Positions 6,420 to 57,283 of a DNA stretch of 64,000 nucleotides are shown one piece after another; position 1 is the first letter of the stretch, and the number at the start of each line of letters is the position of its first letter. The notes beneath the pieces are model-generated. The model made no database searches and was not told the origin of the DNA. It was given only the letters and a program-made list of their open reading frames with translations. The stretch is from positions 1 to 64,000 of IMG/VR virus record IMGVR_UViG_3300042367_000228. One strand, 5' to 3'. The translations under genes were made by a program, and so were the position numbers.

Positions 6420-6443
6420 TGGCAATATCCTTTATATATATTT

Positions 6444-7384: not shown

Positions 7385-7438
7385 GTGTGAAGAACCTCCA
7401 ATTATAAAGCGGTTTTATTACAACCGCAATATTTATGT

Positions 7439-31641: not shown

Positions 31642-31703
31642 AATTATAATCTCCATATATACAAGTTCTAACTGTATTTATAGGAAATTGTATTTTTATG
31701 GCA

Positions 31704-32341: not shown

Positions 32342-32370
32342 ATTATACGCTCTTTATAGTCAAATGTCAA
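32342..32370 (-). promoter_or_regulatory. Consensus sigma70 promoter for dNMP kinase
   Basis: Minus strand TTGACA-17 nt-TATAAT, GGAG SD downstream. Confidence 0.88.
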
Positions 32371-36561: not shown

Positions 36562-36954
36562 CCCTAATACTGCGTCTAATTCTTCATGAGTAGTTGCTGC
36601 AGAAATTGCAGCAATTTTTGTAGTTAAATCCGCTTTTGCTTGTTCAATTTGGGGGAGATTAACTGGTTCGTCTGAATGTATCCAGCGTTGAGTAATACTA
36701 GATACTTGAATCATACATTGCTGTTTAGCATTTGATATTTCAGATCCTTTTCGTTCTTCAAGTAGTAGATCTAAAATAAGATATGTAATTTCAACCGGAT
36801 TTGATAATAAATTATATTGAGGAACTGCAATTTGATTTGTTCTAACAATAGGTTTAGGTTCTAATTCTATTGCATCTCTCCATACTATTTCGTCTTGTTT
36901 CCATAAATTTATAGCACCGGTAGAGTTAACGTTTATTTTGTACATAGTTGCCAT
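36556..36954 (-). CDS. Probable tail-fibre assembly/accessory protein
   Basis: C-terminal ISAATTHEELDAV typical of fibre chaperones; last gene of the fibre operon. Confidence 0.55.
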   Translation of the reverse strand: MATMYKINVNSTGAINLWKQDEIVWRDAIELEPKPIVRTNQIAVPQYNLLSNPVEITYLILDLLLEERKGSEISNAKQQCMIQVSSITQRWIHSDEPVNLPQIEQAKADLTTKIAAISAATTHEELDAVLGL

Positions 36955-36964
36955 TTAATTTTCC

Positions 36965-41090: not shown

Positions 41091-41241
41091 TTATTATTAC
41101 CTGTTGATATGCAGATTCTTGATGCGGAATTGAAATTTCTAATTCAATTATTGAATCTTCTTGTTTAATATGATTAATTGTTACACCGTTTTCTGCTAAT
41201 GCAGTAAGATCGGACGTATTGATTGTTATTTTACTTAACAT
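41059..41241 (-). CDS. Small hypothetical protein
   Basis: AAGGAG SD and ATAAATA (41258-41264) upstream. Confidence 0.6.
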   Translation of the reverse strand: MLSKITINTSDLTALAENGVTINHIKQEDSIIELEISIPHQESAYQQVIINGYNNISPIG

Positions 41242-41265
41242 TACATCTCCTTTTGTATATTTATG

Positions 41266-44321: not shown

Positions 44322-44322
44322 A

Positions 44323-44523
44323 TTACCATTTTCCTATTGGACAAGATTTTACTTTAAGTGTTAAAAGTATAGCAATTGAACAATTACATTCGGAACACAT
44401 TGGTATAAAATGCTCATTAGAGTCTACGCGTTCACATATACTACAGAAACTATTTCTTTTCTGGAGTTCTTCTTCTGAACAATTTAAGTCTAATTCTTTA
44501 ATCTCGTTTATAACTTCATCCAT
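44323..44523 (-). CDS. Small Cys-rich protein
   Basis: CxxC...CxxCxC...CPIGKW pattern. Confidence 0.7.
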   Translation of the reverse strand: MDEVINEIKELDLNCSEEELQKRNSFCSICERVDSNEHFIPMCSECNCSIAILLTLKVKSCPIGKW

Positions 44524-44525
44524 AA

Positions 44526-47500
44526 TTAAAATTCCACAATTAATTTTTCAACATCTTTACGTTCTGCAAATACAGTGTAGAAACAGTTGATATTATCTCC
44601 GCCTACAATTACTGTATTATCTACAATATCTTCAACCCATAAATCTTGTGATTTACCAATAGCAGTTAAGTTTACTGTAATAGTATCTTCATTAACTAAT
44701 CCAATCCAGTAATCTGGTAATTCTATAACATTAGAATCTTTTAATCTACCACGAACATAAACACCATTTTCTGGTCCCTCTAAACTACCATAACGCAGTT
44801 TCATATCTGGTTTAGTTGGATGGTCAATTACGAATGATTTAGTAGTAGCAGCAAATGAACCGTTTACTTGAAGTTTGTAACCAGAATTTACAGTTCCGTT
44901 ACCAATAGTAAGGTTGCCGTTTTGGATGTACATATTAGTTGCAGTAGTATTATTACCAACTACAACGGAACCAGCATTATTCCAATGCAAATAAGTATCT
45001 GATGTTGCGTCTGGATGAATATGTACAGCAGTTGAATACCCGCCAGCTACTCTAAATGAATTTGATGAGTCTATTGCAATAAGATTAGTAGCAGTTCCAT
45101 TTGCCATCTTTTGTTTGATAGCAAAATTATTCTCAAGTAATAGATTACCATTAACGTGCAATTTTTCACTCGGACTAGATGTTCCGATACCAACATTACC
45201 AGCAGAATCAATACGTATGCGTTCAGTTGCCGAGTTGCCCGCAGCAAACACCATGATTCCAGTATCGGATACTGCAATTCTACCTTGCTCACCGTTAGTT
45301 GCATTACCAAAGAACATGTATGCATTATTAGTACCACTGCTAATTGCATGAAATCCAGCATAACCAGAACCACTTTCAGATTTTATAATAGTATCGGCAG
45401 ATGCATTTCTAACATGTAACAATGCAGATGGGCTAGACGTTCCAATACCAAGTTTTCCAGTATTATCCAACACCATTCTAGTAGCAATGCCACTATTACT
45501 AGTTCCCCAAGTATGTGTTCCTATCCCTGAAATTTTATAAAATGATCCCCAACTAGTTCCCGCACCTTGACCATATACTGAACCTGCTTCAAATACAGTT
45601 GATGTATCTGCAGCCCATCTATTACCAACAACTAATCCATTATAAGTAGTAGCATCATTTGCTTGATATATTTTAGCTGCCCAAGTTCCAGTTGGTTCTA
45701 ACAGGACTGCGTTTGTGCCATTTTGAACATGTAGTTTAGCAGTTGGAGTTGATTGTCCAATACCAACATTACCGCTAGAATCAATACGCATACGCTCTGT
45801 GTCGGTTGTCATAAAGACAATCGGCTTTGCAGCTACTGTTTTTAGTCTTAATGAATCACTATTTGTGTCTGATGAAATAACAAATTCTTTTTCATTTCCA
45901 GATTGACTTACACCAGTAAGTCTATTTCCCGTACTATCTCCTGTATAGCTAACATACTGTGTTGGCACTCCAAATCTTGTTAGTCGTGTTTCTCCAGCAA
46001 CTTGTAAAGGAACTGCTGGAGCTGTAGTACCAATACCAACATTACCTGTTGTAGTAATCCGCATCCATTCATTAATAGCAAATATGTCTGTAAACAGTAA
46101 TGGAGCAGCTGACGCACTAGTATGATCATTACCAGATTGTATGTAATTTTTACCGTTTGCGTTTACAAATCTAATTACAGAATTAGCGTCTTGAATTGAC
46201 TGGGAAGTACCAGCTGGTGTATATACATGTAATTTTTCAAGTGGACTAGTTGTTCCAATACCAACATTACCTGTAGATTTAATTGTCATCGCAGTTGATA
46301 ATGTAGTACCGGTCTGTGTTTGAAAATCGATTCTACCGCGAGCATCAGCTGCACTAAATGCATTATCAGCAGTAAAATAGATTCGAGCTACATCATTCAT
46401 TCCAATGCCATCCCAACCCCATCCAGTTAAACACCCTAGCGCATCGTCAGTTTGTACTGCAAGTTTTGTTGCCTCAGTACCTCTACTTCTAAACAGTTCT
46501 AATACACTAAATCCACCATTATCAGCAGTACCTGCTAAATTGCCTGAATAATGAAATGCGTCAAATCCTGCCCATTTAGGTGTTTCTGAACTTGAATTGA
46601 TTGATCGTATTTTAGTAGATGTATCAACTGCGCGTGTTTCCATTGCAGAATTATAAACATAAAACCCGGTATTATTAAGGCGCACACGCTCAACACCGTT
46701 AAACGTCCAGTTTCTATAAAGAACACCTAGACCTAAATCATCTTGGTAATATGGGCTGCCATTTGCATCACGCAATGCTGATATAGAATATGAATTTGCA
46801 GTTCCGCCAATCATTCTTAATGATACAGCTGCCAACGCACCAACTGTTGAATTTCCAATGCCTAATATAGTTTCAGCGTTTTGTGCTTTTGCTACTACTA
46901 ATCTTGCAGCATTTGAATACCAGTTAGAGGGAGACGAAGTACCAATTCCGAGATTGCCGCTGCTATCTAATCGCATTGCTTCAGCAATTGATTGCGGCGA
47001 AGTATTTGTTTGGCCAGTACCCCAAGCTATACCGCCTGTATTTCCGTTACCGTTAAATTGCTGCCATGCCATCCAAGTAGCATCAATTTTTTGCTGCAAT
47101 CGCGTACCAACTGTAGTCCAGTCTGTGCCAGCTGCATCTCTAAAATGTGAGATATCAAATAATCCAACGTTGCCGGAATATGTACTAGAAAATCTTGCGG
47201 ATATTTCTTGACTACCTAGTGTGCCACCTAATGCTGGATTATTTGCTTGAAAACCAATATTACTAACCCATCTATTTTCAGCAAATGTCCAGTATAATGT
47301 CTTATCAGCTGCAGCTTTAATAGTAATACCAGCACCATTTGCAGTTATGTCACTATTCCCAGTAGAGGTAATATTAGTAACAGTACCTGCAGTTGGCGTA
47401 GTTCCACCAGTTACAGTGTACGTGATACTTGTTGAACTAACAATAGATGCAACAACAACTGACGAAGGTGATCCGCCATATAATGTTCCAGTACCAGCTG

Positions 47501-48152
47501 TTGCAGAAATAGACACTCCTGTAATTAGATTAGCAGTAGTTGTCATATTTGTGATAGTAGCAGTCCATGGTCCAGTTCCGGTAATAGAACCAACTGTACC
47601 AGTAGTACTTATTGTTCCTGATGTAACTGAACCAAGTTCGATATTTTTATCATCAACGGATACTGTTGAAGAATTAATTGTAGTTGTAGTACCATTAACT
47701 GTTAAGTTACCTGTAATAGTTGCACTACCACCAACGTTTAAGTTTTCTACAATGCCAACTCCACCTGCAACTTGCAAAGCACCAGATGTAGTAGTAGTTG
47801 ACGTAGTAGTACTTGAAATTGATACTGCTGCAGATCGTAGTTCTAATGTAGTACCAGATCCAGTACGCACCATTACTTTTTTACCAGGAGCAATACCAAC
47901 AACTAAAACCCTGTTATCACCCGGAGCATATGACAATCCTGTAATATTAGTAGAATTCGAAGTAACAAAAATCGGTTGATCGTCAATACTAGTTGCATCT
48001 ACTGTATAGTTTGTGTTAAAATATGGTGTTGTAATATTTGGACTAGTAGACAATACAACAGAACCGGAACCAGTTGATGTAGTAGTTCCGGTACCTCCTG
48101 CTGCAACGGTTAATGTTCCGCTTTTTAAATAATTTGAAAAGTTAATTGACAT
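44526..48152 (-). CDS. Long tail fibre / receptor-binding protein
   Basis: Six G(N/K)(V/L)GIG(T/Q) repeats, VDDKNIELG motif, C-terminal SFAATTKSFVIDHP...EGPENGVYVRG module; ATAAATA at 48173-48179. Confidence 0.88.
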   Translation of the reverse strand: MSINFSNYLKSGTLTVAAGGTGTTTSTGSGSVVLSTSPNITTPYFNTNYTVDATSIDDQPIFVTSNSTNITGLSYAPGDNRVLVVGIAPGKKVMVRTGSGTTLELRSAAVSISSTTTSTTTTSGALQVAGGVGIVENLNVGGSATITGNLTVNGTTTTINSSTVSVDDKNIELGSVTSGTISTTGTVGSITGTGPWTATITNMTTTANLITGVSISATAGTGTLYGGSPSSVVVASIVSSTSITYTVTGGTTPTAGTVTNITSTGNSDITANGAGITIKAAADKTLYWTFAENRWVSNIGFQANNPALGGTLGSQEISARFSSTYSGNVGLFDISHFRDAAGTDWTTVGTRLQQKIDATWMAWQQFNGNGNTGGIAWGTGQTNTSPQSIAEAMRLDSSGNLGIGTSSPSNWYSNAARLVVAKAQNAETILGIGNSTVGALAAVSLRMIGGTANSYSISALRDANGSPYYQDDLGLGVLYRNWTFNGVERVRLNNTGFYVYNSAMETRAVDTSTKIRSINSSSETPKWAGFDAFHYSGNLAGTADNGGFSVLELFRSRGTEATKLAVQTDDALGCLTGWGWDGIGMNDVARIYFTADNAFSAADARGRIDFQTQTGTTLSTAMTIKSTGNVGIGTTSPLEKLHVYTPAGTSQSIQDANSVIRFVNANGKNYIQSGNDHTSASAAPLLFTDIFAINEWMRITTTGNVGIGTTAPAVPLQVAGETRLTRFGVPTQYVSYTGDSTGNRLTGVSQSGNEKEFVISSDTNSDSLRLKTVAAKPIVFMTTDTERMRIDSSGNVGIGQSTPTAKLHVQNGTNAVLLEPTGTWAAKIYQANDATTYNGLVVGNRWAADTSTVFEAGSVYGQGAGTSWGSFYKISGIGTHTWGTSNSGIATRMVLDNTGKLGIGTSSPSALLHVRNASADTIIKSESGSGYAGFHAISSGTNNAYMFFGNATNGEQGRIAVSDTGIMVFAAGNSATERIRIDSAGNVGIGTSSPSEKLHVNGNLLLENNFAIKQKMANGTATNLIAIDSSNSFRVAGGYSTAVHIHPDATSDTYLHWNNAGSVVVGNNTTATNMYIQNGNLTIGNGTVNSGYKLQVNGSFAATTKSFVIDHPTKPDMKLRYGSLEGPENGVYVRGRLKDSNVIELPDYWIGLVNEDTITVNLTAIGKSQDLWVEDIVDNTVIVGGDNINCFYTVFAERKDVEKLIVEF

Positions 48153-48182
48153 TTAGAAATTCCTATATCGTATATTTATCGT

Positions 48183-48593
48183 CTATGAACGATTCAATAT
48201 TTGATGTTTAATTTGAGTTGACCAGTACACAGCGTGTTTACTTTCAATTCTAATATCATATTTAATAGGTTTTTCAAATATAAGGTTTGTATCGTTATAC
48301 TTACTTTGATTTATAGTGTCAACAAATACTGTAAAATCTGCATTAAATATTTTTCTAATTTCTTCAGTTGGTGCAACAAAATCACATATTACATATTTAG
48401 CGTTGGATTGTTCAGCTAATTGTTTCATTCTATTACACTGTCGCAGTCTTCCCTGATCGCTAAAATCCCAATCATTATACTGTTTTCTAATTTCATCGGC
48501 ATTAAACCATTCTAAATTTGGTAAAATTTTAATTAATTCATTTGCTAATGTTGTTTTACCTGAACCAGGTAATCCTAATATAAGTATTTTCAT
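48183..48593 (-). CDS. cysC: Adenylylsulfate (APS) kinase-like P-loop kinase
   Basis: GLPGSGKTTLA, NADEIR, WDFSDQGR, FEKP pattern; short (136 aa). Confidence 0.7.
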   Translation of the reverse strand: MKILILGLPGSGKTTLANELIKILPNLEWFNADEIRKQYNDWDFSDQGRLRQCNRMKQLAEQSNAKYVICDFVAPTEEIRKIFNADFTVFVDTINQSKYNDTNLIFEKPIKYDIRIESKHAVYWSTQIKHQILNRS

Positions 48594-49099
48594 TATTCAA
48601 GTAAAACAGTATTTAATAAGAATAACTGAGTTAATTTATTTGGATCCAATGAATACCAAATCCACGGTCTAATATAAATGTAATCATTCTTTTTCAATTT
48701 AATAGTATTAACTGTTAACCATTTACTAGCATCATAACAATTATCAACAATAAATTCATCTAAGTTATCTATAACATCAAACACAGTCTTTACAGTATCT
48801 TGTTCATAAATAGTTAAAAGAGTATCTTCCATTGCAACTATAACTAACCACATCGAATGTTGAAAAAACTGTTCTACATGGATTATATCAGATGATTTTC
48901 TAAAAATACCAGTACCTTGTTGTATAGTAATATTAGAATTAATTTCGTGTTTAAAATAATCTTCTAAATCAGCCGGAACGTAATTAAAGTTGATAATTTC
49001 TTCACCAAATATTGCACCCTCAAACTCCATTGAAGACATTAACATGTGCAATTGATCTATGTTATTATACAAGCCAGAACAATGAATAAAATTTTGCAT
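48593..49099 (-). CDS. Hypothetical protein, possibly a degenerate 2OG-Fe(II) oxygenase-like fold
   Basis: IHVE...WLVIVAM pattern; second metal-binding His not evident. Confidence 0.5.
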   Translation of the reverse strand: MQNFIHCSGLYNNIDQLHMLMSSMEFEGAIFGEEIINFNYVPADLEDYFKHEINSNITIQQGTGIFRKSSDIIHVEQFFQHSMWLVIVAMEDTLLTIYEQDTVKTVFDVIDNLDEFIVDNCYDASKWLTVNTIKLKKNDYIYIRPWIWYSLDPNKLTQLFLLNTVLLE

Positions 49100-49103
49100 A
49101 TTT

Positions 49104-51908
49104 TTACCTTTTGTATGTACTTAAATATTTAAAAAAGAAGTCTCTTTCAGTTTCTTCATCTAGCACATAAAAATCAATAACCTCGCCATTAACATTTTGA
49201 AATGCTAATTTTTCTGGTAATTTACCTTTATACGCGATATTATTGATAGCGCAATAACTATAAAAATGTTGCACTACACCTAAAGATAATCTGATAGTCC
49301 AATCATCGCCGCAATTTTTTAATTCTTTATGCCACATCTCCATTCCGCGTTCAAGCCAAGTAAAGTCAGGTTTTGGATGATCTGTTATAAATTTACTCCA
49401 ATAATCAACTAAGATATAATGTTTAGCAAAAACTCTATCTGGATATGTTCTAACATTTTTATAAATTAAATCAGAATTTCTACCTATAGATTTTCTTTTT
49501 AATAATTCATGATTAGCTAAACCATAATGTAAAATCCAAGCATAATCTTGCCAAAACATTTTACCTAAAAAATGCTCACCGTCTTTAGATGGATATTCAT
49601 GCACAACACCAGTAAATCTAATTTTACCTCGTTTAAATAATCTATCGTGCATAACATCAACATTAATACCCATTTTATGGGAATCAAGTGACATGCATTG
49701 TTTTTGTTTCAACAACATACCATCATAGTAATCGCTGGTAATATACTTAAATAAATTTTTCCAACTTTCAACTTGTTCATCAGCATCAATCCAAAAAATA
49801 TAATCTCCAGATGCTTGATCAATAGAATAATTTCTAGCTCTAGAAAAATTACCTAATCCATCTTCTTCTAACCATTCTAAATCATAAATTTTATCTGTAT
49901 ATTTTTCGGCAATTCGTTTAGTGTCATCAGTAGAACCAGTATCAACAATAATAATTTCATCTACAAATCCATTTAACGATTTTAAACAACGAGAAATATT
50001 ATCTTCTTCATTTCTAACAATCATACAAGCAGAAATAGATTTATATGGTCTAGTTTTTATCCATTTTTCATTATAATCAATTTCACCAAATTCAATATTA
50101 TCGCCTTTAGAAGAATTAAACCAAAACGAAATATTGCTACAAGGTTCGTTTCTTCTACCCACCACACTAGAAGATGAATGAATTAACGTAAAATCTACGT
50201 TTTTTAATAATTGTTTAATATCAGATCTTTCAAAATGATGAACATGATTAAGTTCTACTTTATTCATTATCATATTATCCCACGGTCCTGTTGGAGTAGT
50301 AAAATAAAATAACGTATCAAGTTGAGCTAATTTAGTTACTGTATTAAGAAATTCTTTAGTATCCTCAATATGTTCCATTACCTCACCAAGAATAACTACA
50401 TCAGGTTTAATATCATAATTCAAAATATTAAACACAGAATCACAAATAAATTTTAATTGAGGATATTTAGATTTATATCGTTTTTCAACAAAATCTAACA
50501 CAGGTTTATAAGTATCAACTAATGTCATTTCTGAAATATTAAGAGAAAATCGTGTTAGTAATGGCAATGATAATATACCATCATTACTTCCTATGTCAAC
50601 AATTTTTAATTTTTTACTAGGAGCTTTTTTAATAATATCATCAACTAAATTTATTAGATGAGTACCTCTTTCATCTAACATAAAATCTTCGTCTGAGTTA
50701 TAATCTTCTCTAACTAATACAACATTTTTATTGTAATAATCAGCATTATCTAACAATTTTCTATATTTTTCATCTCCTGTTAATTTATAAGCAGCTACTA
50801 TATCTGAATTATAAACTAACTGGTCTAAAATTTTAGATTTATATTTTTCAAATCTTTTATTAAACATAGAATCAATTTCTCTGTTCCAAGATTTGGCTAC
50901 GTTTTGCCAAGAATATTTTTCAATATCTACTCGCGCCTTATCTACAGCTTGATCATACAAATCTTTATCTTGATATTTTTTTACTAATGATAAAAATTCA
51001 TCAAAATATTCTTGTGTATCGTATTTTGATTTAACTGTAGTTTGAGATTTAACAGTTTCTGATAATGCAAAATTATGTGTAGCAATAATCATACATTCAT
51101 TATATTGAGCTTCAATAGCATTAATACAACTAATTTCAGGAAAATCTGTTGGATATAGCATGTATGCGCAATTAGAAAGTAATTCATAATATTCGCGTTT
51201 AGGTAAATTACCTATCATTTTAACATTAGTTGAATACTCTAATAATTCTTCAACCTCATTATAAATTTTTTGAACTTCTTCCGGAGTTCCTAGTGTATGC
51301 TCATATCCGCATAAATGTAATATTGCATCAGGATTAATATCTAACACTTCTGGCCATATTTTTTCAAGTAGATATTTCAATCCTCGTTCGGGTCTAGAAG
51401 CATAGATATAATTATTTTTCTTTTCTTCAAATGATTTTTTTGTTGTTATAATTGACTGATCATAACCATTAGAAGTTTTCCAAATATAATTAGTTGGTTC
51501 AATAGTATAATTGTTAACAAATAACGATTTATGATATTCACTTAAACAAAATACTCTATCTGCTACGCCCATAGCATCACGAAAATTATTAGAATCAATA
51601 TCATGACACCAAAGAACGTTAAGTTTTGAATCTAATGGAACTGCTAGAAAATCTGTAAATCTACTTACAATTACAACATCAAATTGAGAAATATCATCTG
51701 CCATATATTTTTCTAATGGTCGATACTCAACATTATCATAAATTCCAGGTTTATCGCATTTACAATAAACTGTTACTTCATGACCTAAGGCTGCAGTTTC
51801 TTTAGCCATATAGATCAAGGCTGATTCTGACCCACCTAACGCTTTTTCGTAAACTGAATTACCATTAAATTCTAATCCAGCAGTTACAAAACAAATACTT
51901 TTATTCAT
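49104..51908 (-). CDS. Tri-domain GT4 glycosyltransferase / SAM methyltransferase / GT2 glycosyltransferase
   Basis: YASRPERGL and EISCINAIEA (GT-B); VDIGSNDG and EVMEHI (MTase); ACMIVRNEE, VDTGSTD, WIDADE (GT-A). Confidence 0.88.
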   Translation of the reverse strand: MNKSICFVTAGLEFNGNSVYEKALGGSESALIYMAKETAALGHEVTVYCKCDKPGIYDNVEYRPLEKYMADDISQFDVVIVSRFTDFLAVPLDSKLNVLWCHDIDSNNFRDAMGVADRVFCLSEYHKSLFVNNYTIEPTNYIWKTSNGYDQSIITTKKSFEEKKNNYIYASRPERGLKYLLEKIWPEVLDINPDAILHLCGYEHTLGTPEEVQKIYNEVEELLEYSTNVKMIGNLPKREYYELLSNCAYMLYPTDFPEISCINAIEAQYNECMIIATHNFALSETVKSQTTVKSKYDTQEYFDEFLSLVKKYQDKDLYDQAVDKARVDIEKYSWQNVAKSWNREIDSMFNKRFEKYKSKILDQLVYNSDIVAAYKLTGDEKYRKLLDNADYYNKNVVLVREDYNSDEDFMLDERGTHLINLVDDIIKKAPSKKLKIVDIGSNDGILSLPLLTRFSLNISEMTLVDTYKPVLDFVEKRYKSKYPQLKFICDSVFNILNYDIKPDVVILGEVMEHIEDTKEFLNTVTKLAQLDTLFYFTTPTGPWDNMIMNKVELNHVHHFERSDIKQLLKNVDFTLIHSSSSVVGRRNEPCSNISFWFNSSKGDNIEFGEIDYNEKWIKTRPYKSISACMIVRNEEDNISRCLKSLNGFVDEIIIVDTGSTDDTKRIAEKYTDKIYDLEWLEEDGLGNFSRARNYSIDQASGDYIFWIDADEQVESWKNLFKYITSDYYDGMLLKQKQCMSLDSHKMGINVDVMHDRLFKRGKIRFTGVVHEYPSKDGEHFLGKMFWQDYAWILHYGLANHELLKRKSIGRNSDLIYKNVRTYPDRVFAKHYILVDYWSKFITDHPKPDFTWLERGMEMWHKELKNCGDDWTIRLSLGVVQHFYSYCAINNIAYKGKLPEKLAFQNVNGEVIDFYVLDEETERDFFFKYLSTYKR

Positions 51909-51910
51909 AA

Positions 51911-52522
51911 TTAATTTACTCTCTTATAGGCTTTTTTATGTTTAGATATAGCAAATATTTCAAATCCGCCTGTTAACATTTTATCTTCAATTTGTTGATG
52001 ATCGTAATATGGAATATCATCAAATATTATAATTCCATTCATAGAGAGTCTAGGAATAAAAAAATCTGCTTCTAGCAATACGGCATCTGTACAGTGAGGA
52101 CCGTCAATAAATACTAAAGCATAGTTGGATTCGATTGTTTTAACTTGATTATACACTGGAATACCGTCAGAATATCTAGAGAAAAATTCAGTATCTTCTA
52201 AATTAAAAAATTGAAAATTAAATCCTAAATCAGTTATATAAGAAAATAAATTAGGAATCGTTTCGTCTCTCATACGATTATTATAATCAAATTTTATAGC
52301 TAAATGCAAATCGCTAGAAGCATAATCTATATTTCCGTAAGGATCAACACAAACAAATACTCTATTAGTATCTTCAAATCGTTCTAAAGAATCTGCGATT
52401 AGTATTGCAGATCCACCTTTTCGAGTCCCTAACTCTATTATATTTCCAAAGATATTATTTTTTGAAATATATTCACAAGCATCATTTAATATTTCATAAT
52501 CTATACTATCAGTTTCAAACAT
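51911..52522 (-). CDS. Class I SAM O-methyltransferase (TylF/Methyltransf_24-like)
   Basis: IELGTRKGGS, VFIDGPH, IIFDD. Confidence 0.85.
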   Translation of the reverse strand: MFETDSIDYEILNDACEYISKNNIFGNIIELGTRKGGSAILIADSLERFEDTNRVFVCVDPYGNIDYASSDLHLAIKFDYNNRMRDETIPNLFSYITDLGFNFQFFNLEDTEFFSRYSDGIPVYNQVKTIESNYALVFIDGPHCTDAVLLEADFFIPRLSMNGIIIFDDIPYYDHQQIEDKMLTGGFEIFAISKHKKAYKRVN

Positions 52523-53885
52523 TATATTTTTCCTTTAATACAGCTTTTAGTTCGTCATATACTTCATTCCAAATTTCCGGAGTAACTTGTCTAATTAACC
52601 TTACGTTTTCTCCATACCAACTAGAATTTGGTTTACCTTCGGCCCAGACATAATATTCCATGATAGGAATTAATATAACAACTTGTTTACCTAGCGCAGC
52701 CGCTGCATGTGCAACTGAAGTACACGAAGTTATTACTAAATCTAGGTTATGGATTACACCTAGTAAATCTTCAAATGTACTTAACTCAAATTGCAAATCA
52801 ACAACTTCATTATGATTTTCTAATTGCGCTAACCCAACATCTCGTTGAATAGAATATAAACTCCAGTTATTGCCTTCTGGTAAGGAATTTATAACTTCTG
52901 TTAAATTAACGCTGCGATGTAATTCATGATCATATCTTGGATTGCCTGCCCATCGCAACCCAACTTTAAATTCTCCAGATAATTTATGTTTCTCAATATA
53001 GTCAGGTTTAGCTTGTAAATAAGGGCCGTACCATAAATCGTTAGCATCAATTCCTAATGTTTTTGGTAATGCCATCATTGGAGTCCAACAATCATAATCT
53101 TCTTTTTTATAGTCTGAAATATCAATAATTTTTTCAAATGGTAAATGATTGTAAATTGTATGCACTTTATGAGTAGTCATAATAGAAACTTTCATACCAA
53201 GATCTCTTAAATGTTTTACAAATCTAACATTAATAATCTCGTCGCCAATGCCGCCTTCACCTACCATTAATATATGTAAATTTGGTTTTGGTTTACCGTT
53301 CCATTCAGGGATATCCCAAACTTTAGAATATGATCCAAATACATTTAACTTTCTACCAATGTAAAGGTGTTCCATACCTTTTTTAAAATCTCCATCTTGA
53401 ATATAATGCACTCCAAGATTAAATAAGATCGAATCCGCTTCTCGTTGATCGTATTTCCATAAATTTTCTTCCATGGATTTAACAATATCATAAGATTCTT
53501 GTTTTTTATTACACGCAAATAATGCAGCTGAATAATCTAATAGATAGCGATCATTATCTTGAATATTATCCATAACAAATTCATAATATTCTACAGATTT
53601 AGTTGGCTTATTTGCTGACAAATAAATTTTAGCTAAATTAGACTTAATTGCTACAGTTTGTTCAATAGCTTTAGATAGCGATAATGCTTTTTCGCCATAT
53701 TCTATAGCAGTAACAAATCTTTTTGCTTTATCATAAGAATAACTATATAAATCATAACCTAAAATATCAAGAGGAACTATTTTATTTTTTTCAAATAGTT
53801 CCATTAAATTTACTATTTCGTCTAATAAATCCGATCTTGATAAAATATCAACTGTTTGCTTTACTGCATCATAATCTGTAGCCAT
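52515..53885 (-). CDS. TPR-containing GT9-like glycosyltransferase
   Basis: TPR helices, then EGGIGDEI, VGLRWAGNP, DLVITSCTSVAHAAAALGK; ATG 53885 preferred. Confidence 0.82.
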   Translation of the reverse strand: MATDYDAVKQTVDILSRSDLLDEIVNLMELFEKNKIVPLDILGYDLYSYSYDKAKRFVTAIEYGEKALSLSKAIEQTVAIKSNLAKIYLSANKPTKSVEYYEFVMDNIQDNDRYLLDYSAALFACNKKQESYDIVKSMEENLWKYDQREADSILFNLGVHYIQDGDFKKGMEHLYIGRKLNVFGSYSKVWDIPEWNGKPKPNLHILMVGEGGIGDEIINVRFVKHLRDLGMKVSIMTTHKVHTIYNHLPFEKIIDISDYKKEDYDCWTPMMALPKTLGIDANDLWYGPYLQAKPDYIEKHKLSGEFKVGLRWAGNPRYDHELHRSVNLTEVINSLPEGNNWSLYSIQRDVGLAQLENHNEVVDLQFELSTFEDLLGVIHNLDLVITSCTSVAHAAAALGKQVVILIPIMEYYVWAEGKPNSSWYGENVRLIRQVTPEIWNEVYDELKAVLKEKYNV

Positions 53886-54672
53886 TATTTTCCAATTCCA
53901 AAATAAACTCGTATTCCGATGATGATAATTTTTCTTCAGGAACACAAATAAAATTTATATCCAAAACAAAAGTTTTATAACCTAACGATTCAATTAACGT
54001 TTTTAGTTCAGTTGCACCGTTATATTGCTTATAATATTCAATATACATTAGTGGTCTGTGCTTGTTAATTGTAGCAACAGCACCATTAACTACGTCTAGT
54101 TCCATCCCTTCAACATCAACTTTAATAATAGAAATATTTTCTATATCTTTAAAGTATTCATCAATAACAATTTGATCAACAATTTCACCATTACCAAAAT
54201 CTAGATCTTGGCCAACATCATCAAATTCTCCAGTAAGACCTACACTACCAAAACTAGCCGGTTTATAATAATCTACTTTAGGTACAGTTATCGGTTTAGT
54301 AGACGATCCGACTGCAGTTTTTTCCGCATATACGTTATCTACGCTGTTTAATGCTAAGTTACCACATAGCATTTGATAGATCTGACGTTGCGGTTCAAAT
54401 GCATACACAGTTCCATTTGCTGGTAAAATTGCATCAGCAACTTGGACAGAGAACGCGCCGATGTTAGCACCAACATCAATCACTGCAGGATACTTTTTAT
54501 CCTTAAGGTAATGACGTAAGATCCACATTAATTCCATGTTTTCTGATCCCATGTTCATTAAATGATATCCAACTCCGGGAAAATTTTCTATAGGATTGTA
54601 ATCAAATCGGTTTACTATCATCATACCAAACTCAGTCGGTATTATAACATTTCTTCTTGGTTTTCCTATCAT
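53869..54672 (-). CDS. FkbM-family methyltransferase
   Basis: VIDVGANIG, YAFEPQ, IKVDVEGME. Confidence 0.92.
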   Translation of the reverse strand: MIGKPRRNVIIPTEFGMMIVNRFDYNPIENFPGVGYHLMNMGSENMELMWILRHYLKDKKYPAVIDVGANIGAFSVQVADAILPANGTVYAFEPQRQIYQMLCGNLALNSVDNVYAEKTAVGSSTKPITVPKVDYYKPASFGSVGLTGEFDDVGQDLDFGNGEIVDQIVIDEYFKDIENISIIKVDVEGMELDVVNGAVATINKHRPLMYIEYYKQYNGATELKTLIESLGYKTFVLDINFICVPEEKLSSSEYEFILELENNGYRL

Positions 54673-55448
54673 TTCATGTGCTTCCAAAAATCCATTTCTT
54701 CTAAATGGTTAAACAAATCTGGTGGAAGAATCGTTTGACGTTCTTTAAACTGAACTTTATTCCTAACATGATGTAACCCTTTAATGTTCATGTCGAAATC
54801 AAATTCATCGTAATCACCAACTACGTTATCAAAATCATGATCAAACCAAGATTCTCCAATAAATTCATAAATTTTCTTCATAACTAATTTAGGATTTTTA
54901 GCTAATTGATCATATTGGACTATCATAACATTTTCTTTCTTTGCCCCAAACAACGCTTCTTTAACTCCGTTATATGCAAACCCAACAAATGAAGATGAAT
55001 CTGTTAGATATTGCGCTCTAGAGTAAACAGAAACTCCTGCTCCGTCAGGAAATATAGACGGAACATCGTATGGATTTTTAGCAAATAAAGTTTCAAATGA
55101 ATCTATAATCCACGGAATTGATCGTATGCAAACAATAATCTTAGCGTCTGGATATAAATCAGCTAATAATGGAGTTAAATAAGTCCACCCTCGATTAGTA
55201 TCAAACACTACGTTATTTGAATCTTTATAGTAAGTTTCTGTAAGAGAATGAATTAATTCTTTGCGTTTTTCTGGTGGGCATTGGAATCTATATCCGCCCT
55301 GTGATTGACTTTCTTGAATAATAGCTCGTGTAAATCTAGCAAGCGGACCAGAAATACTTGCTCCAAAATTTGGATTTTGATTTAAAATGGAAGAAAGAAG
55401 GGTTGTTCCAGAACGGGGCAACCCTGAGATAAAATGAATTTTTTGCAT
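54669..55448 (-). CDS. Sulfotransferase
   Basis: 5'-PSB loop SGLPRSGTTLL; CIRS motif. Confidence 0.9.
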   Translation of the reverse strand: MQKIHFISGLPRSGTTLLSSILNQNPNFGASISGPLARFTRAIIQESQSQGGYRFQCPPEKRKELIHSLTETYYKDSNNVVFDTNRGWTYLTPLLADLYPDAKIIVCIRSIPWIIDSFETLFAKNPYDVPSIFPDGAGVSVYSRAQYLTDSSSFVGFAYNGVKEALFGAKKENVMIVQYDQLAKNPKLVMKKIYEFIGESWFDHDFDNVVGDYDEFDFDMNIKGLHHVRNKVQFKERQTILPPDLFNHLEEMDFWKHMK

Positions 55449-55479
55449 ATTGACCTTTCAAATAGTATAATAAAACATA

Positions 55480-55508
55480 ATTTTACTATACTTAGTTCAA
55501 AAAGTCAA
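55480..55508 (-). promoter_or_regulatory. sigma70-like promoter heading the glycan-modification operon
   Basis: TTGACT-17 nt-TAAAAT upstream of the sulfotransferase ATG. Confidence 0.65.
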
Positions 55509-55511: not shown

Positions 55512-56144
55512 TTATTTTTTTTCTAAATCATATTCACGCAATTCAACTGTTGTTTGAATAGCGTCAATTTCAGCAGTTTTTGTAGATTCCCAATTAAAAC
55601 AATTTTGGATATGCGCCATTATAGAATTAACAATTAATTGTAAATCAGTTTTGTTAATTACAAAAAAACCTTCTGGAAATTTCCATTCAGCAGAGTAATC
55701 ATCATTGGTTAATAATAATGCTTGAGAATACATTACTCTAGTTTCTCTATCAGTATACAGAGTTAACATTTTTCCATTAATATCTCGCGTAATTGGCGTT
55801 GTTTCTTTAACCCAGCGTAAATTTGCTAATAATGATTTTAAATTAACTTTTATAGATTCTATAGGAAATTCTTGTGCGTAAAATTCTGCTATGTGATTAT
55901 TAGATTCATCATAATAGAATCTTGGTCCAGCTATTTGATCAAATATTGTATTAAGTTCTGTTGGATTAACAATTTGCGTTGGAACCAATTTTAACGATTC
56001 ATTAAAAATTAATGGTTCGCTTGGCGGATGTTCTATAGTAACTTGTTGGTGTAATTCTTCAGAAACAAAGTGTTCAAAATATGCTTGATGCCAATCTCTT
56101 GGACCTGTTATTATATTTTCGTTTTTTAATAATGTGTATGCCAT
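55512..56144 (-). CDS. Fibre-associated accessory protein (DUF4376-like C-terminus)
   Basis: LYTDRETRVMY...WK...HIQNCFNWE pattern. Confidence 0.6.
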   Translation of the reverse strand: MAYTLLKNENIITGPRDWHQAYFEHFVSEELHQQVTIEHPPSEPLIFNESLKLVPTQIVNPTELNTIFDQIAGPRFYYDESNNHIAEFYAQEFPIESIKVNLKSLLANLRWVKETTPITRDINGKMLTLYTDRETRVMYSQALLLTNDDYSAEWKFPEGFFVINKTDLQLIVNSIMAHIQNCFNWESTKTAEIDAIQTTVELREYDLEKK

Positions 56145-56152: not shown

Positions 56153-57283
56153 TTATACTATTTGTAATCCCATTGTCGAATAAATTCCACCAGTAACGTT
56201 ACTCCAGTTACTTAAAGTTCCGACTTGCATTGGGCTTGATCTATTGGTTGTATCCAATAATCCTAATCGACCTTGAGCATTTAAACCCCAAGTCCATAAT
56301 GTTCCGTCTGTTTTTACTGCTGCTGTATGAAATTGCCCGCAAGAAATTTTACTCCAGTTGGATAGAGTCCCAACTTGCGTTGGGCTTGATCTATGAGTTA
56401 AATCTCCTAATCCCAATTGACCAAACGTATTATTTCCCCAAGTCCACAATGTTCCGTCTGTCTTAATCGCTGCTGCAAAAAAACTTCCAGAAGAACTCGA
56501 AACTTTACTCCAGTTAGATAGAGTCCCAATTTGCACTGGGCTTGATCTATGAGTTAAATCTCCTAATCCCAATTGACCCAAACTATTACCACCACAAGTC
56601 CATAATGTTCCATCTGTTTTTACTGCTACTATGTGATTTTGTCCAGCAGAAATTTTACTCCAGTTGGATAGAGTTCCAACTTGTACTGGGCTTGATCTAT
56701 TGGTTACATCGGCTCCTAATTGGCCAAGACCATTTAAACCCCAAGTCCATAATGTTCCATTTGTTTTTACTGCTGCTGTATAATATTGCCCACAACTAAC
56801 TTGACTCCAGTTAGATAGAGCACCAACTTGTATTGGGGTACTTTTATTGGCTGTATCGCCTAATCCTAATTGACCATAAGTAGCACTATTTCCCCAAGCC
56901 CATAATGTTCCGTCTGTTTTAATTGCTGCTATATGATTCCATCCAGCACTAACTTGACTCCAATTAGATGCAGGTACAACTTGATTTGGGCTACTTTTAT
57001 TGGTTGTATCAGTTAATCCTAGTACAAGATAAATATTAAATCCCCAAGTCCATAATGTTCCGTCTGTTTTAATAGCCGCTGCAGAATGATTTCCGATAGA
57101 AATTTGACTCCAGTTAGATAGAGTCCCAATTTGCACTGGGCTTGATCTATTGGTTATATCAGATAATCCTAATTCTCCATATGTTTGGCCAAACCCCCAA
57201 GCATACATATTCCCAGTTGTCTTAAACATAGCCGTGGACATATATCTTGTTTGTAATTTTGTTCCAGTTACTTTATAAGTCAT
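56153..57283 (-). CDS. RCC1/BLIP-II repeat beta-propeller protein (7 blades)
   Basis: Seven ~52-aa repeats HxAAIKTDGTLWTWGxNxxGQLG...SSPVQVG. Confidence 0.93.
   Translation of the reverse strand: MTYKVTGTKLQTRYMSTAMFKTTGNMYAWGFGQTYGELGLSDITNRSSPVQIGTLSNWSQISIGNHSAAAIKTDGTLWTWGFNIYLVLGLTDTTNKSSPNQVVPASNWSQVSAGWNHIAAIKTDGTLWAWGNSATYGQLGLGDTANKSTPIQVGALSNWSQVSCGQYYTAAVKTNGTLWTWGLNGLGQLGADVTNRSSPVQVGTLSNWSKISAGQNHIVAVKTDGTLWTCGGNSLGQLGLGDLTHRSSPVQIGTLSNWSKVSSSSGSFFAAAIKTDGTLWTWGNNTFGQLGLGDLTHRSSPTQVGTLSNWSKISCGQFHTAAVKTDGTLWTWGLNAQGRLGLLDTTNRSSPMQVGTLSNWSNVTGGIYSTMGLQIV

What the first reader, a model, noticed from the sequence alone, without database searches (positions are those of the whole stretch)
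48183..55508. Self-contained glycosylation-methylation-sulfation operon between adhesin modules
One apparent transcription unit encodes a sulfotransferase, FkbM MTase, TPR-GT9, TylF-like O-MTase, GT4-MTase-GT2 fusion, an unknown protein and an APS-kinase-like enzyme. APS kinase makes PAPS, the sulfotransferase donor (established). TPR and GT2 domains of this type often act on proteins. Inference: the phage builds a methylated, sulfated glycan on its Ser/Thr-rich fibres or on the host surface. The sigma70-like promoter hints at early expression.
Basis: partly seen in the sequence, partly recalled or inferred. Interest (0 to 1): 0.6.

Follow-up and report, generated by a model that had tools for sequence, protein, structure and literature searches.

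The report
Phage fibre glycosylation, methylation and sulfation cassette
A freshwater jumbo phage carries a compact, separately promoted set of seven soluble enzymes (three sugar-adding domains, three methyl-adding domains, a sulfate-adding enzyme and a small kinase that probably makes the sulfate donor). The set always sits next to the phage's propeller-shaped tail-fibre genes, so it most likely decorates those fibres; sulfation of a phage particle has not been described in the papers I could search.

Summary
Window 48183-55508 (minus strand) carries seven tightly packed ORFs. They are a sulfotransferase, an FkbM methyltransferase, a TPR + GT9-fold glycosyltransferase, a TylF-like methyltransferase, a GT4-methyltransferase-GT2 fusion, a DUF6445-like double-stranded beta-helix protein, and a shortened APS-kinase-like kinase.

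This stretch has the lowest G+C of the 372-kb lake-phage genome.

New findings:
- The GT2 domain groups with the protein/peptide glycosyltransferases GmaR and SunS.
- The TPR + GT-B layout matches protein O-glycosyltransferases (OGT, SPY, FlmG).
- The sulfotransferase model is closest to tyrosylprotein sulfotransferases.
- No enzyme has a membrane segment.
- In about 12-13 of 14 independent contig types, the sulfotransferase lies within 1.4 kb of RCC1-repeat fibre genes. This holds at 55-57% identity and in a bacterial MAG.

Best reading (about 0.5): a mobile cassette that post-translationally decorates the phage's RCC1/fibre proteins with an O-methylated glycan and sulfate, using host APS and sugar nucleotides. 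Whether sulfate goes on the glycan or on tyrosine, and whether the kinase is a true APS kinase, remain open. Host-surface remodelling is the main rival. Verdict: new variant of a known kind; interest about 0.6.

The parts
55480..55508 (-). Sigma70-type promoter TTGACT-17 nt-TAAAAT, 32 nt before the sulfotransferase ATG
   Evidence: Searches show the site. The -35 and -10 boxes keep 17-nt spacing in L002, L034, L013, L016 and L012 while the spacer diverges. The motif class is enriched in the window, 7 found against 1.46+-1.17 expected.
54669..55448 (-). Sulfotransferase, 259 aa, with PAPS-binding motifs GLPRSGTT (5'-PSB) and R109...S117 (3'-PB)
   Evidence: PF13469 at 66 bits and phrog_27463 at 1e-45. 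AF2 pLDDT 88; best structural matches are TPST2, TPST1 and tick TPST at Z 18.4-18.6. The best PDB sequence hit is TPST2, E 1.8e-4.
53869..54687 (-). FkbM-family (RfbT-like) SAM methyltransferase, 272 aa; probable sugar O-methyltransferase
   Evidence: TIGR01444 at 91.6 bits, PF05050 at 67.9 bits, PF05575 at 28.2 bits. Present in only some relatives.
52515..53885 (-). TPR (residues 1-180) + GT-B glycosyltransferase of GT9 fold, 456 aa from Met21 (the ORF is open back to 53945)
   Evidence: AF2 pLDDT 92.5. VIA Z 17.6 to 3tov, 16.5 to WaaF, 16.2 to WaaC and 16.1 to TibC. Foldseek places the whole chain on OGT/SPY. Invariant GIGD and HAAAALG motifs. The family has more than 1390 members.
51911..52522 (-). 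Methyltransf_24 / TylF-like SAM O-methyltransferase, 203 aa
   Evidence: PF13578 at 44.6 bits and PF05711 at 31.4 bits. Found only in the closest relatives.
49104..51908 (-). Three-domain fusion, 934 aa: GT4 (about 1-350), class I methyltransferase (about 420-580), GT2 of the GmaR/SunS type (about 620-830)
   Evidence: Pfam. SunS model TIGR04195 at 57 bits. PDB GmaR 2.4e-27; a SunS-like GT2 chain (7msk) 3e-12 and SunS 4e-10. EX7E, methyltransferase motif I and DAD motifs are present.
48593..49099 (-). DUF6445-like double-stranded beta-helix (2OG-oxygenase fold) protein, 168 aa; the distal metal-binding His is replaced by Tyr
   Evidence: Atlas structure TM 0.77 to DUF6445 clusters, which are often fused to GT2 or a methyltransferase in viruses. 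Homologues carry HxE...H, whereas this copy and L002 read RPWIWYS.
48183..48593 (-). Shortened APS-kinase-like P-loop kinase, 136 aa
   Evidence: PF01583 at 33 bits. PDB APS kinase 2yvu at 2e-5. Aligned with two full-length cellular PF01583 domains (226.7 and 182 bits), the P-loop, D33, R36, F44, R49 and R55 are invariant. It belongs to a large viral mini-kinase family.
55512..56144 (-). DUF4376 tail-fibre-like protein, 210 aa; shares the low GC of the cassette and recurs next to the sulfotransferase elsewhere
   Evidence: PF14301 and phrog_10508. GC 28.9%. 94% identical in L002. Present in L014, L043, L045 and L127.
56153..63998 (-). Tandem array of four RCC1-repeat (beta-propeller) tail proteins, the candidate substrates; the last ORF may extend past the window end
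   Evidence: PF25390 and PF00415 with very strong scores; PHROG tail-protein hits. Adjacency to the sulfotransferase is conserved across lineages.
44526..48152 (-). 1208-aa Ser/Thr-rich tail fibre immediately downstream, with its own late-type ATAAATA motif 20 nt before the start
   Evidence: PHROG tail-fibre hits. 23.6% Ser+Thr. Motif seen. Absent from L002-type relatives.

Best explanation
This is a mobile seven-gene cassette of soluble cytoplasmic enzymes, transcribed from its own sigma70-type promoter, that modifies the phage's own fibre proteins after translation. The most likely substrates are the RCC1-repeat beta-propeller proteins and the DUF4376 protein encoded just upstream.

Proposed steps (all inferred):
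1. The TPR domain of the TPR + GT9-fold enzyme binds the protein substrate, and its GT-B domain attaches a sugar, as FlmG and OGT do.
2. The GmaR/SunS-type GT2 and the GT4 domains of the fusion start or extend the glycan.
3. The embedded methyltransferase and the FkbM and TylF-like methyltransferases O-methylate sugars.
4. The sulfotransferase adds sulfate from PAPS, either to the glycan or directly to tyrosine.
5. The mini APS-kinase-like enzyme raises PAPS from host-made APS.

Sugar nucleotides, SAM and APS come from the host.

Shown here: the domain identities, intact catalytic motifs, the operon layout, the conserved promoter and the conserved linkage to RCC1 genes. Inferred: the substrates, the order of reactions and the biological role (fibre stability, masking, or receptor binding).
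For: - Enzyme identities and intact motifs.
- The GT2 domain is closest to the flagellin O-GlcNAc transferase GmaR (2.4e-27) and to the peptide S-glycosyltransferase SunS; the best NCBIfam model is SunS.
- The TPR + GT-B chain matches OGT/SPY as a whole. The GT9 fold set includes the adhesin heptosyltransferase TibC at Z 16.1. FlmG shows that a TPR domain can bind a protein substrate (PMC7591256).
- The sulfotransferase is structurally and by sequence nearest to tyrosylprotein sulfotransferases.
- None of the seven proteins has a membrane segment, and there is no flippase, polymerase or priming transferase.
- RCC1 genes lie within 1.4 kb of the sulfotransferase in 12-13 of 14 distinct contig types. 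This holds where gene order and the accessory genes differ (L043-45, L127, L133), and in a Bdellovibrionales MAG whose module is fibre-like 1525-aa protein, sulfotransferase, RCC1 protein.
- The sulfotransferase and the TPR-GT9 enzyme recur together down to 26-38% identity; in the most diverged clusters it is one of two sulfotransferase copies (L133, L134).
- The mini kinase recurs with sulfotransferases in the diverged cluster L133.
- The genome lacks ATP sulfurylase.
- The cassette lies inside the virion structural region, on the same strand as the fibre genes.
- Iyer et al. 2010 predicted that 2OG-dioxygenase + sulfotransferase + PAPS-synthetase operons modify tail-collar proteins (PMC2938197).
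Against: - There are no expression or proteomic data. The 24 runs that hold the DNA are all recorded as DNA.
- A sigma70-type (early-type) promoter differs from the late-type ATAAATA motif in front of the fibre and sheath genes. That would also suit a host-directed function.
- All characterised GT9 enzymes that I know of use ADP-heptose, mostly on LPS. The phage encodes no heptose pathway nearby.
- From memory of the TPST2 sequence, its catalytic Glu does not appear to be conserved here, so tyrosine sulfation is not established.
- Close kinase homologues sit in DNA-metabolism regions of Xylella and Stenotrophomonas phages; none of those records is among the matches to this sulfotransferase.
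- Some relatives lack the kinase altogether (L034, L038, L043-45).
- Gene adjacency is not proof of an enzyme-substrate relation.
- Complex prediction could not be run.
Confidence: 0.5

Rival explanations
1. Host-surface remodelling. The enzymes act early in infection on host LPS core, capsule or outer-membrane proteins, adding heptose or hexose, methyl and sulfate. This would block superinfection or stop progeny from sticking to debris.
For: - A conserved sigma70-type promoter suggests early expression.
- The GT9 fold is typical of LPS heptosyltransferases.
- FkbM/RfbT-like and TylF-like methyltransferases modify O-antigen and other glycans.
- The GT2 domain also hits the PHROG family 'GtrB-like O-antigen conversion' at 2e-6.
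Against: - There are no membrane segments, flippase or lipid-carrier enzymes.
- The GT2 domain is far closer to GmaR and SunS than to GtrB.
- The TPR domain argues for a protein substrate.
- Tight, repeated linkage to RCC1 and fibre genes across lineages is not expected for a host-directed function.
Confidence: 0.2
2. Two separate protein modifications. The sulfotransferase sulfates tyrosines of RCC1 or fibre proteins directly (TPST/RaxST-like), independently of the glycan built by the glycosyltransferases and methyltransferases.
For: - TPSTs are the top structural matches (Z 18.4-18.6) and the top sequence matches.
- In the Bdellovibrionales MAG the sulfotransferase sits between a fibre-like protein and an RCC1 protein, with no glycosyltransferase nearby.
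- RaxST with RaxPQ is a bacterial precedent for peptide tyrosine sulfation with a dedicated PAPS supply (PMC4646787).
Against: - The sulfotransferase is almost always paired with the TPR-GT9 enzyme.
- The TPST catalytic Glu seems not to be conserved (inspection against a sequence recalled from memory).
- Identity to TPSTs is only 17-20%.
Confidence: 0.25
3. The kinase is not an APS kinase. It is a member of a phage kinase family with another substrate (a nucleotide, a cofactor precursor or a sugar), placed next to the cassette by chance or to activate a sugar.
For: - It scores 25-30 bits against NCBIfam APS-kinase cut-offs of 127-139.
- The lid is shortened and the Ser of the ISP motif is Ala.
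- Homologues at 43-48% identity in Sano and Salvo-type phages lie beside MazG and topoisomerase genes.
- Many relatives are fused to an HxGH/ISxT nucleotidyltransferase domain.
- Its identity to L002 (74%) falls well below that of the core cassette (96-100%).
Against: - It passes the Pfam APS_kinase cut-off.
- The residues that I recall as APS-contacting in solved APS kinases (Asp, Arg, Phe, Arg) are invariant in the alignment with the two cellular APS_kinase-domain sequences.
- It recurs with sulfotransferases in independent clusters.
- The genome lacks any other PAPS-pathway gene.
Confidence: 0.35
4. DNA hypermodification, or synthesis of a small sulfated glycoconjugate, rather than protein decoration.
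For: Phage glycosyltransferases and P-loop kinases are known to hypermodify DNA (reviewed in PMC12619734). The kinase's relatives sit in DNA-metabolism regions.
Against: - The cassette lies in the tail-fibre module.
- The TPR domain and the GmaR/SunS-type GT2 point to proteins.
- No base-modifying genes lie next to the cluster.
- Sugar O-methyltransferases and a sulfotransferase are not known parts of DNA modification pathways (my knowledge).
Confidence: 0.05

Closest known systems
Mycobacteriophage virion glycosylation (Freeman et al. 2023, PMC10527164, as cited in PMC12619734)
   Same: Phage-encoded glycosyltransferases sit next to structural genes and are thought to act in the cytoplasm on virion proteins.
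   Different: Here there are three glycosyltransferase domains of other families, three methyltransferases, a sulfotransferase and a PAPS-related kinase. The candidate substrates are RCC1/fibre proteins rather than capsid or tail-tube C-termini. Nothing is shown experimentally.
Flagellin glycosylation systems: Listeria GmaR (GT2) and Caulobacter FlmG (TPR + GT-B; PMC7591256)
   Same: The GT2 domain matches GmaR at 2.4e-27. The TPR + GT-B layout is that of FlmG, whose TPR domain binds the protein substrate. Both are soluble cytoplasmic enzymes acting on a surface filament protein before assembly.
   Different: The GT-B domain here has the GT9 fold. The substrate would be a phage fibre, not flagellin. 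There are no nonulosonic-acid genes. Sulfation is added.
Autotransporter heptosyltransferases TibC / AAH (GT9-like)
   Same: A GT9-type fold (Z 16.1 to TibC) that glycosylates Ser residues of repetitive adhesins in the cytoplasm.
   Different: TibC has no TPR domain and forms an iron-containing dodecamer. The donor here is unknown and no heptose pathway is encoded.
Tyrosylprotein sulfotransferases and Xanthomonas RaxST with RaxPQ (PMC4646787)
   Same: This is the best structural and sequence neighbour of the sulfotransferase. RaxST works with a dedicated PAPS supply.
   Different: Identity is only 17-20%. The catalytic Glu of TPST seems absent. No RaxX-like peptide or RaxAB exporter is present. 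Here only the kinase half of PAPS synthesis is encoded.
Chlorovirus PBCV-1 A064R and giant-virus fibril glycosylation (my knowledge, not tested here)
   Same: Virus-encoded multi-domain enzymes combine glycosyltransferase and methyltransferase domains and build methylated glycans on virion proteins independently of host machinery.
   Different: Those are eukaryotic viruses with different domain families and order, and no sulfation module.
Predicted 2OG-dioxygenase + sulfotransferase + PAPS-synthetase operons linked to tail-collar or collagen-like proteins (Iyer et al. 2010, PMC2938197)
   Same: A sulfotransferase, a double-stranded beta-helix protein, methyltransferases and a PAPS-pathway enzyme are encoded beside phage-fibre-type proteins proposed as substrates.
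   Different: Those are bacterial operons with active hydroxylases and no glycosyltransferases. Here the beta-helix protein has lost a metal ligand, and glycosyltransferases dominate.

Membership tests
PAPS-dependent sulfotransferase (Pfam Sulfotransfer_3 / Sulfotransfer_1) | Score above the curated cut-off; 5'-PSB and 3'-PB PAPS-binding motifs; sulfotransferase fold | tested here: met
   PF13469 at 66.4 bits against 27, PF00685 at 46.3 against 22. GLPRSGTT and R109...S117 are invariant in the family. All top structural matches are sulfotransferases.
Tyrosylprotein sulfotransferase (TPST/RaxST type) | Catalytic Glu after the PSB loop and a peptide-binding groove; activity on Tyr peptides | tested here: inconclusive
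   It is the nearest fold (Z 18.4-18.6, 224-231 residues aligned, 17-20% identity) and the nearest PDB sequence hit. The position I recall as the catalytic Glu reads Ser-Gly-Pro here; this is an inspection against a sequence recalled from memory. Activity is not testable here.
Adenylyl-sulfate (APS) kinase | Family score above the cut-off | tested here: inconclusive
   Pfam PF01583 at 33.2 bits passes its 21.1 cut-off. The NCBIfam models (TIGR00455 at 25.3 against 138.7; PRK05541 at 30.5 against 127) are not reached.
Adenylyl-sulfate (APS) kinase | P-loop plus APS-contacting Asp, Arg, Phe and Arg; the Ser of the 'ISP' motif; a full lid (RDPKGLYKKAR) | tested here: inconclusive
   The P-loop, D33, R36, F44, R49 and R55 are invariant when aligned with two full-length cellular APS_kinase domains. 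The Ser is Ala, and the lid is about 10 residues shorter.
CAZy GT9 (heptosyltransferases) | Sequence-family membership (PF01075) | tested here: not met
   12.7 bits against a 22-bit cut-off, matching only the C-terminal nucleotide-binding motif.
CAZy GT9 (heptosyltransferases) | GT-B fold closest to GT9 structures | tested here: met
   Z 17.6 (3tov), 16.5 (WaaF), 16.2 (WaaC) and 16.1 (TibC). The next non-GT9 GT-B fold, the UDP-GlcNAc 2-epimerases, is at about 11.9.
CAZy GT9 (heptosyltransferases) | Use of ADP-heptose as donor | not testable with these tools
   No NTP_transferase is encoded in the genome, and no nucleotidyltransferase lies near the cluster: the one CTP_transf_like match is at 172.7 kb.
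GT41 / OGT-SPY-type protein O-glycosyltransferase | TPR + GT-B with the GT41 catalytic-domain fold | tested here: not met
   The whole-chain Foldseek matches (E 4e-9) have TM of only 0.28-0.40. The catalytic domain aligns better to GT9. The layout is shared; family membership is not.
GT2, GmaR/SunS protein-peptide glycosyltransferase group | PF00535 above the cut-off; DxD motif; closest relatives are protein-acting GT2s | tested here: met
   74.1 bits against 23.3. DAD at 708-710. GmaR 2.4e-27; SunS 4e-10. The SunS equivalog cut-off (350 bits) is not reached (57 bits), so it is not a SunS orthologue.
GT4 (Glycos_transf_1) | PF00534 above the cut-off; EX7E motif | tested here: met
   38.8 bits against 26.4. 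EX7E at 258-266.
FkbM-family and TylF/Methyltransf_24 SAM methyltransferases | Scores above the curated cut-offs | tested here: met
   TIGR01444 at 91.6 against 37.7. PF13578 at 44.6 against 26.3. PF05711 at 31.4 against 23.
2OG-Fe(II) oxygenase / DUF6445 | Sequence-family hit; HxD/E...H metal triad | tested here: not met
   There is no Pfam hit. The structure matches at TM 0.77. The distal His is Tyr in this copy, while homologues keep HxE...H.
Operon (single transcription unit) | Same strand, minimal gaps, one promoter upstream, a terminator downstream | tested here: inconclusive
   Gaps run from -19 to +4 nt. The sigma70-type promoter is conserved. No terminator was found; a late-type ATAAATA motif follows, in front of the next gene. 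No RNA data exist.
Phage virion glycosylation system | A glycan demonstrated on virion proteins | not testable with these tools
   Only genomic linkage to fibre genes is available.

The most novel reading that the evidence does not exclude
Many freshwater phages put sulfate on their RCC1-propeller tail fibres, either as tyrosine O-sulfate or as a sulfated, O-methylated glycan, using their own sulfotransferase and a minimal PAPS-forming kinase. This would be the first sulfated phage virion, and a new way for phages to tune adhesion (for example to polyanion-binding receptors or mucus-like matrices) or to mask their fibres.
Probability: 0.35. Interest if true: 0.8.

Novelty: new variant of a known kind. 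Interest (0 to 1): 0.62.

Why it matters
Glycosylation of phage particles was shown only recently, and only in mycobacteriophages. Sulfation of a phage particle has not been reported in the papers I could search.

The core pair here, the sulfotransferase and the TPR-GT9 enzyme, belongs to large families: more than 3400 and more than 1390 proteins respectively in metagenomes. Most sampled members lie on phage-like contigs beside RCC1-repeat fibre genes. If the cassette decorates fibres, this would be a widespread and unstudied layer of host recognition and particle stability in aquatic phages.

It would also supply compact enzymes for making sulfated or methylated glycoproteins in the cytoplasm: a 136-aa APS-kinase-like protein and a three-in-one GT4-MT-GT2. 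The hypothesis can be tested directly by co-expression in E. coli.

Tried and rejected
- Near-identical DNA in GenBank phages: none.
- Sequence search of the TPR protein against the PDB, alone and as a profile: only TPR hits, so the GT9 call needed a fold search.
- ATP sulfurylase, CysD/PAPS reductase and NTP_transferase in the whole genome: absent. A second GT4 (248.5 kb), an epimerase (312.7 kb) and a CTP_transf_like domain (172.7 kb) lie far from the cluster.
- DUF6445 by sequence: no match at the locus.
- Cellular homologues of the sulfotransferase in Rhodanobacteraceae (39-44% identity): the Dyella neighbourhood holds a GH2 hydrolase, a LacI regulator and a STAND NTPase, which was uninformative.
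- The moraphage paper and the Ostreococcus-virus paper: not relevant, since 'RCC' there means a culture collection.
- RNA evidence: no run holding the stretch is recorded as RNA.
- Terminator scan: 8 weak sites against 5.3 expected, none at the cluster end.
- The exact T4 late motif TATAAATA is not enriched overall, 6 found against 14.7 expected. The shorter ATAAATA is concentrated upstream of gene starts.
- The big representative-protein search was not used, because no claim here rests on an absence of relatives.
Full report
**Context.** The window is the first 64 kb of a complete 372,016-bp virus record with direct terminal repeats. The virus is a jumbo myovirus. Its 1148-aa tail sheath is about 44-46% identical to those of Pseudomonas phage PA5oct, Agrobacterium phage Atu_ph07 and Sinorhizobium phage Phosso. 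The same DNA is held by 24 lake-water or freshwater metagenome runs; none is recorded as RNA. Nearly all large ORFs from 36.5 to 64 kb are on the minus strand and encode virion parts:
- four RCC1-repeat proteins,
- a DUF4376 tail-fibre-like protein,
- a 1208-aa tail fibre,
- two LamG-domain structural proteins.

Neck and sheath genes follow.

**The observation.** Seven minus-strand ORFs fill 48183-55448, with gaps of -19 to +4 nt. A 63-nt gap lies upstream and a 30-nt gap downstream.
- the sulfotransferase,
- the FkbM methyltransferase,
- the TylF/Methyltransf_24 methyltransferase,
- the GT4-methyltransferase-GT2 fusion.

The EX7E, SAM motif I and DxD motifs of the fusion are intact.

The 'TPR-GT9' protein shows only TPR repeats by sequence. 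PF01075 reaches 12.7 bits, below its cut-off, and only on the C-terminal nucleotide-binding motif. An AF2 model built from 32 homologues (pLDDT 92.5) has an N-terminal TPR solenoid and a C-terminal GT-B domain. That domain aligns best to GT9 structures: Z 17.6 to 3tov, 16.5 to WaaF, 16.2 to WaaC and 16.1 to the adhesin heptosyltransferase TibC. The next non-GT9 GT-B fold, the UDP-GlcNAc 2-epimerases, scores about 11.9. As a whole chain, Foldseek places the model on OGT, SPINDLY and bacterial OGT homologues. Databases call the gene from Met21, giving 456 aa.

The 'unknown' 168-aa protein has no sequence family. Its Atlas model matches DUF6445, a 2OG-oxygenase-like beta-helix that viruses often fuse to GT2 or methyltransferase domains (TM 0.77). 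Its homologues keep an HxE...H triad, but this copy and its closest relative have Tyr in place of the distal His. It is therefore probably not a working oxygenase.

The kinase passes the Pfam APS_kinase cut-off (33 against 21 bits) but not the NCBIfam cut-offs. I aligned it with two full-length cellular APS_kinase domains, from a Dyella genome and a Bdellovibrionales MAG (226.7 and 182 bits to PF01583). It keeps the P-loop and the Asp, Arg, Phe, Arg and Arg positions, which I recall as APS-contacting. It has Ala for the Ser of the ISP motif and a lid about 10 residues shorter. It belongs to a large, mostly viral family of proteins of about 130-155 aa.

**Composition and mobility.** The 48-54 kb stretch is the lowest-GC part of the whole genome: 27.8-28.4%, against a mean of 35.6% with sd 2.4. 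The DUF4376 gene shares this low GC. One set of IMG/VR contigs (L002 type) is 96-100% identical in protein from the sulfotransferase to the fusion protein (94% in the adjacent DUF4376 protein). It is only 51-74% identical in the sheath and the RCC1 proteins, and 74-81% in the last two cassette genes. Those contigs also lack the window's 36.5-48.2 kb fibre block. The cassette therefore behaves as a mosaic module exchanged among related phages.

**Transcription.**
- A loose consensus scan finds as many such sites as chance predicts, so the site alone proves nothing.
- The stricter motif TTGAC-N17-19-TANAAT occurs 7 times in the window against 1.46 expected, and no shuffle reached 7. One copy lies 21 nt before the dNMP-kinase gene.
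- In an alignment of the upstream regions of eight loci, the -35 and -10 boxes and their 17-nt spacing are kept in six (the window plus five relatives), while the spacer and flanks diverge. In three of those relatives the -35 box falls inside the upstream ORF.
- The T4-late-like core ATAAATA lies within 60 nt upstream of gene starts in 9 of its 17 minus-strand occurrences, although those upstream regions cover about 5% of the window. It precedes the sheath, adaptor and 1208-aa fibre genes, but no gene of the cassette.

The cassette is therefore a plausible separate unit read by unmodified host polymerase, probably earlier than the fibre genes. No terminator was found and no RNA data exist.

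**What the enzymes point to.**
- The GT2 domain's best solved relatives are GmaR, the Listeria flagellin O-GlcNAc transferase (2.4e-27), and the SunS-type peptide S-glycosyltransferases. SunS is also the best NCBIfam model.
- TPR + GT-B is the layout of protein O-glycosyltransferases. In FlmG the TPR half binds the flagellin substrate (PMC7591256).
- The AF2 model of the sulfotransferase (pLDDT 88) is closest to human TPST2 and TPST1 and tick TPST: Z 18.4-18.6 with 224-231 aligned residues. It lies ahead of the olefin-synthase sulfotransferase domain (16.3), Stf9 (14.3) and the heparan-sulfate enzymes (about 13.5). TPST2 is also the best PDB sequence hit. Both PAPS-binding motifs are invariant in the family.
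- The FkbM enzyme just passes the RfbT model, and the TylF-like enzyme resembles sugar O-methyltransferases. A methylated glycan is therefore likely.
- None of the seven proteins has a membrane segment, and no flippase, polymerase or priming transferase is present.
- The genome has no ATP sulfurylase or CysD and no sugar nucleotidyltransferase, so APS and sugar donors must come from the host.

**Linkage.** This is the strongest new evidence. In every related viral contig with enough upstream sequence, RCC1-repeat genes end 70-1400 nt before the sulfotransferase. The pattern holds in more distant settings:
- **Contigs at 57-58% sulfotransferase identity** keep it although gene order and accessory genes differ. 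In L043-45 the order is sulfotransferase, fusion protein, two small ORFs, then the TPR protein. L127 has different downstream genes.
- **A 126-kb contig (L133)**, whose TPR-GT9 protein is 38% identical, carries two sulfotransferases, a mini APS kinase and an RCC1 gene among Peptidase_S74 fibres.
- **A Bdellovibrionales MAG** has the sulfotransferase (55% identity) between a 1525-aa protein that shares a segment with the window's fibre and a 402-aa RCC1 protein, beside AbiE and BrnTA modules.

Only L134 shows no RCC1 gene. The core that recurs is the sulfotransferase plus TPR-GT9. The fusion protein is frequent. FkbM, TylF, the beta-helix protein and the kinase come and go.

**Most likely mechanism (inferred).** The soluble enzymes act in the infected cell's cytoplasm on the phage's RCC1, DUF4376 or fibre proteins. 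The TPR-GT9 enzyme recognises the protein and adds a sugar. The GT2 and GT4 domains start or extend the glycan. The three methyltransferase domains cap its hydroxyls. The sulfotransferase adds sulfate to the glycan or to tyrosine. The kinase converts host APS to PAPS, which many bacteria make in small amounts or not at all (my knowledge). I put about 0.5 on virion-protein decoration. I put about 0.85 on the broader statement that this is a glycan-building, methylating and sulfating cassette.

**Rivals.**
- **Host-surface remodelling (0.2).** It fits the early-type promoter, the GT9 fold and the weak GtrB-like PHROG hit. It does not explain the TPR domain, the GmaR/SunS affinity, the lack of membrane parts or the RCC1 linkage.
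- **Direct tyrosine sulfation, separate from the glycan (0.25, a variant of the main model).** It fits the TPST resemblance and the MAG module that lacks glycosyltransferases. However, the TPST catalytic Glu appears absent, judged against a sequence I recalled from memory.
- **The kinase has another substrate (0.35).** Homologues at 43-48% identity lie among MazG and topoisomerase genes in Xylella and Stenotrophomonas phages; none of those records is among the matches to this sulfotransferase. Many relatives are fused to an HxGH/ISxT nucleotidyltransferase.
- **DNA or small-molecule targets (about 0.05).**

**Comparison with what is known.** The nearest demonstrated system is mycobacteriophage virion glycosylation. 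The nearest in mechanism are:
- flagellin glycosylation (GmaR, FlmG),
- adhesin heptosylation (TibC),
- RaxST/RaxPQ peptide sulfation.

Iyer et al. 2010 predicted sulfation of tail-collar proteins by bacterial dioxygenase-sulfotransferase-PAPS operons. My searches found no paper linking phage sulfotransferases with tail fibres, RCC1 proteins or jumbo phages. This is not a new kind of system. It is a new variant: protein glycosylation combined with methylation and sulfation, tied to RCC1 fibres and widespread in lake metagenomes.

**Limits.**
- There are no expression, proteomic or activity data.
- The substrates are inferred from adjacency and from domain type.

Noticed in passing
window, minus strand; e.g. 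31675-31682 (before the sheath start at 31656) and 48170-48180 (before the fibre start at 48152): The T4-late-like core ATAAATA lies within 60 nt upstream of gene starts in 9 of its 17 minus-strand occurrences, although those regions cover about 5% of the window. It looks like this phage's late promoter.
   Followed up: partly
window 5616-5644(-), 13302-13330(-), 32342-32370(-), 35158-35186(-), 7167-7194(+), 37972-38001(+): Strict sigma70-type promoters (TTGAC-N17-19-TANAAT) occur 7 times against 1.46 expected. One lies 21 nt before the dNMP-kinase gene (31704-32321), so early-type genes appear to be interspersed in the structural region.
   Followed up: partly
window 36556-48152: An 11.6-kb block is absent from the otherwise colinear L002-type relatives. 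It holds the 1208-aa fibre, two LamG proteins, an 823-aa protein and three small Ser/Thr-rich proteins. In the relatives the kinase gene abuts the NUDIX gene. This looks like a fibre-module insertion or deletion.
   Followed up: partly
window 56153-63998: A tandem array of four RCC1-repeat propeller genes (376, 978, 482 and 577 or more aa) has highly similar repeats at the DNA level (65-85%), which makes it a likely hot spot for recombination and host-range change.
   Followed up: no
L013:13141-13980, L016:10961-11899, L012:8638-9456; Xylella phage Sano L128:5992-6729: In several relatives the mini kinase is fused to a C-terminal domain of about 110 aa carrying GRWQPWHDGH and ISATKIR motifs, typical of HxGH nucleotidyltransferases. 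The kinase-then-transferase order recalls PAPS synthase, NadR and HldE; its substrate is unknown.
   Followed up: partly
L046/L048 (Bdellovibrionales MAG contig JANMPT010000028.1), locus 3348-9992: A three-gene module (1525-aa fibre-like protein, sulfotransferase, 402-aa RCC1 protein with a weak TAT-signal hit) sits between AbiE and BrnT/BrnA modules in a bacterial contig. It may be a prophage or tailocin remnant.
   Followed up: partly
genome C1:231402-243017 and 345611-347932 (outside the window): ARAGORN finds seven tRNA genes and a tmRNA-like call elsewhere in the 372-kb genome, and none in the window.
   Followed up: no
window 28210-31656: The tail sheath is unusually long (1148 aa). Only about 60% of it aligns to the sheaths of PA5oct and Atu_ph07-type jumbo phages, in two pieces, which suggests a large inserted domain.
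   Followed up: no
L133:13028-13816, L134:7155-9110, and an ENA contig without DNA: Several diverged versions of the cluster carry two sulfotransferase paralogues, which suggests more than one sulfation site or substrate.
   Followed up: no
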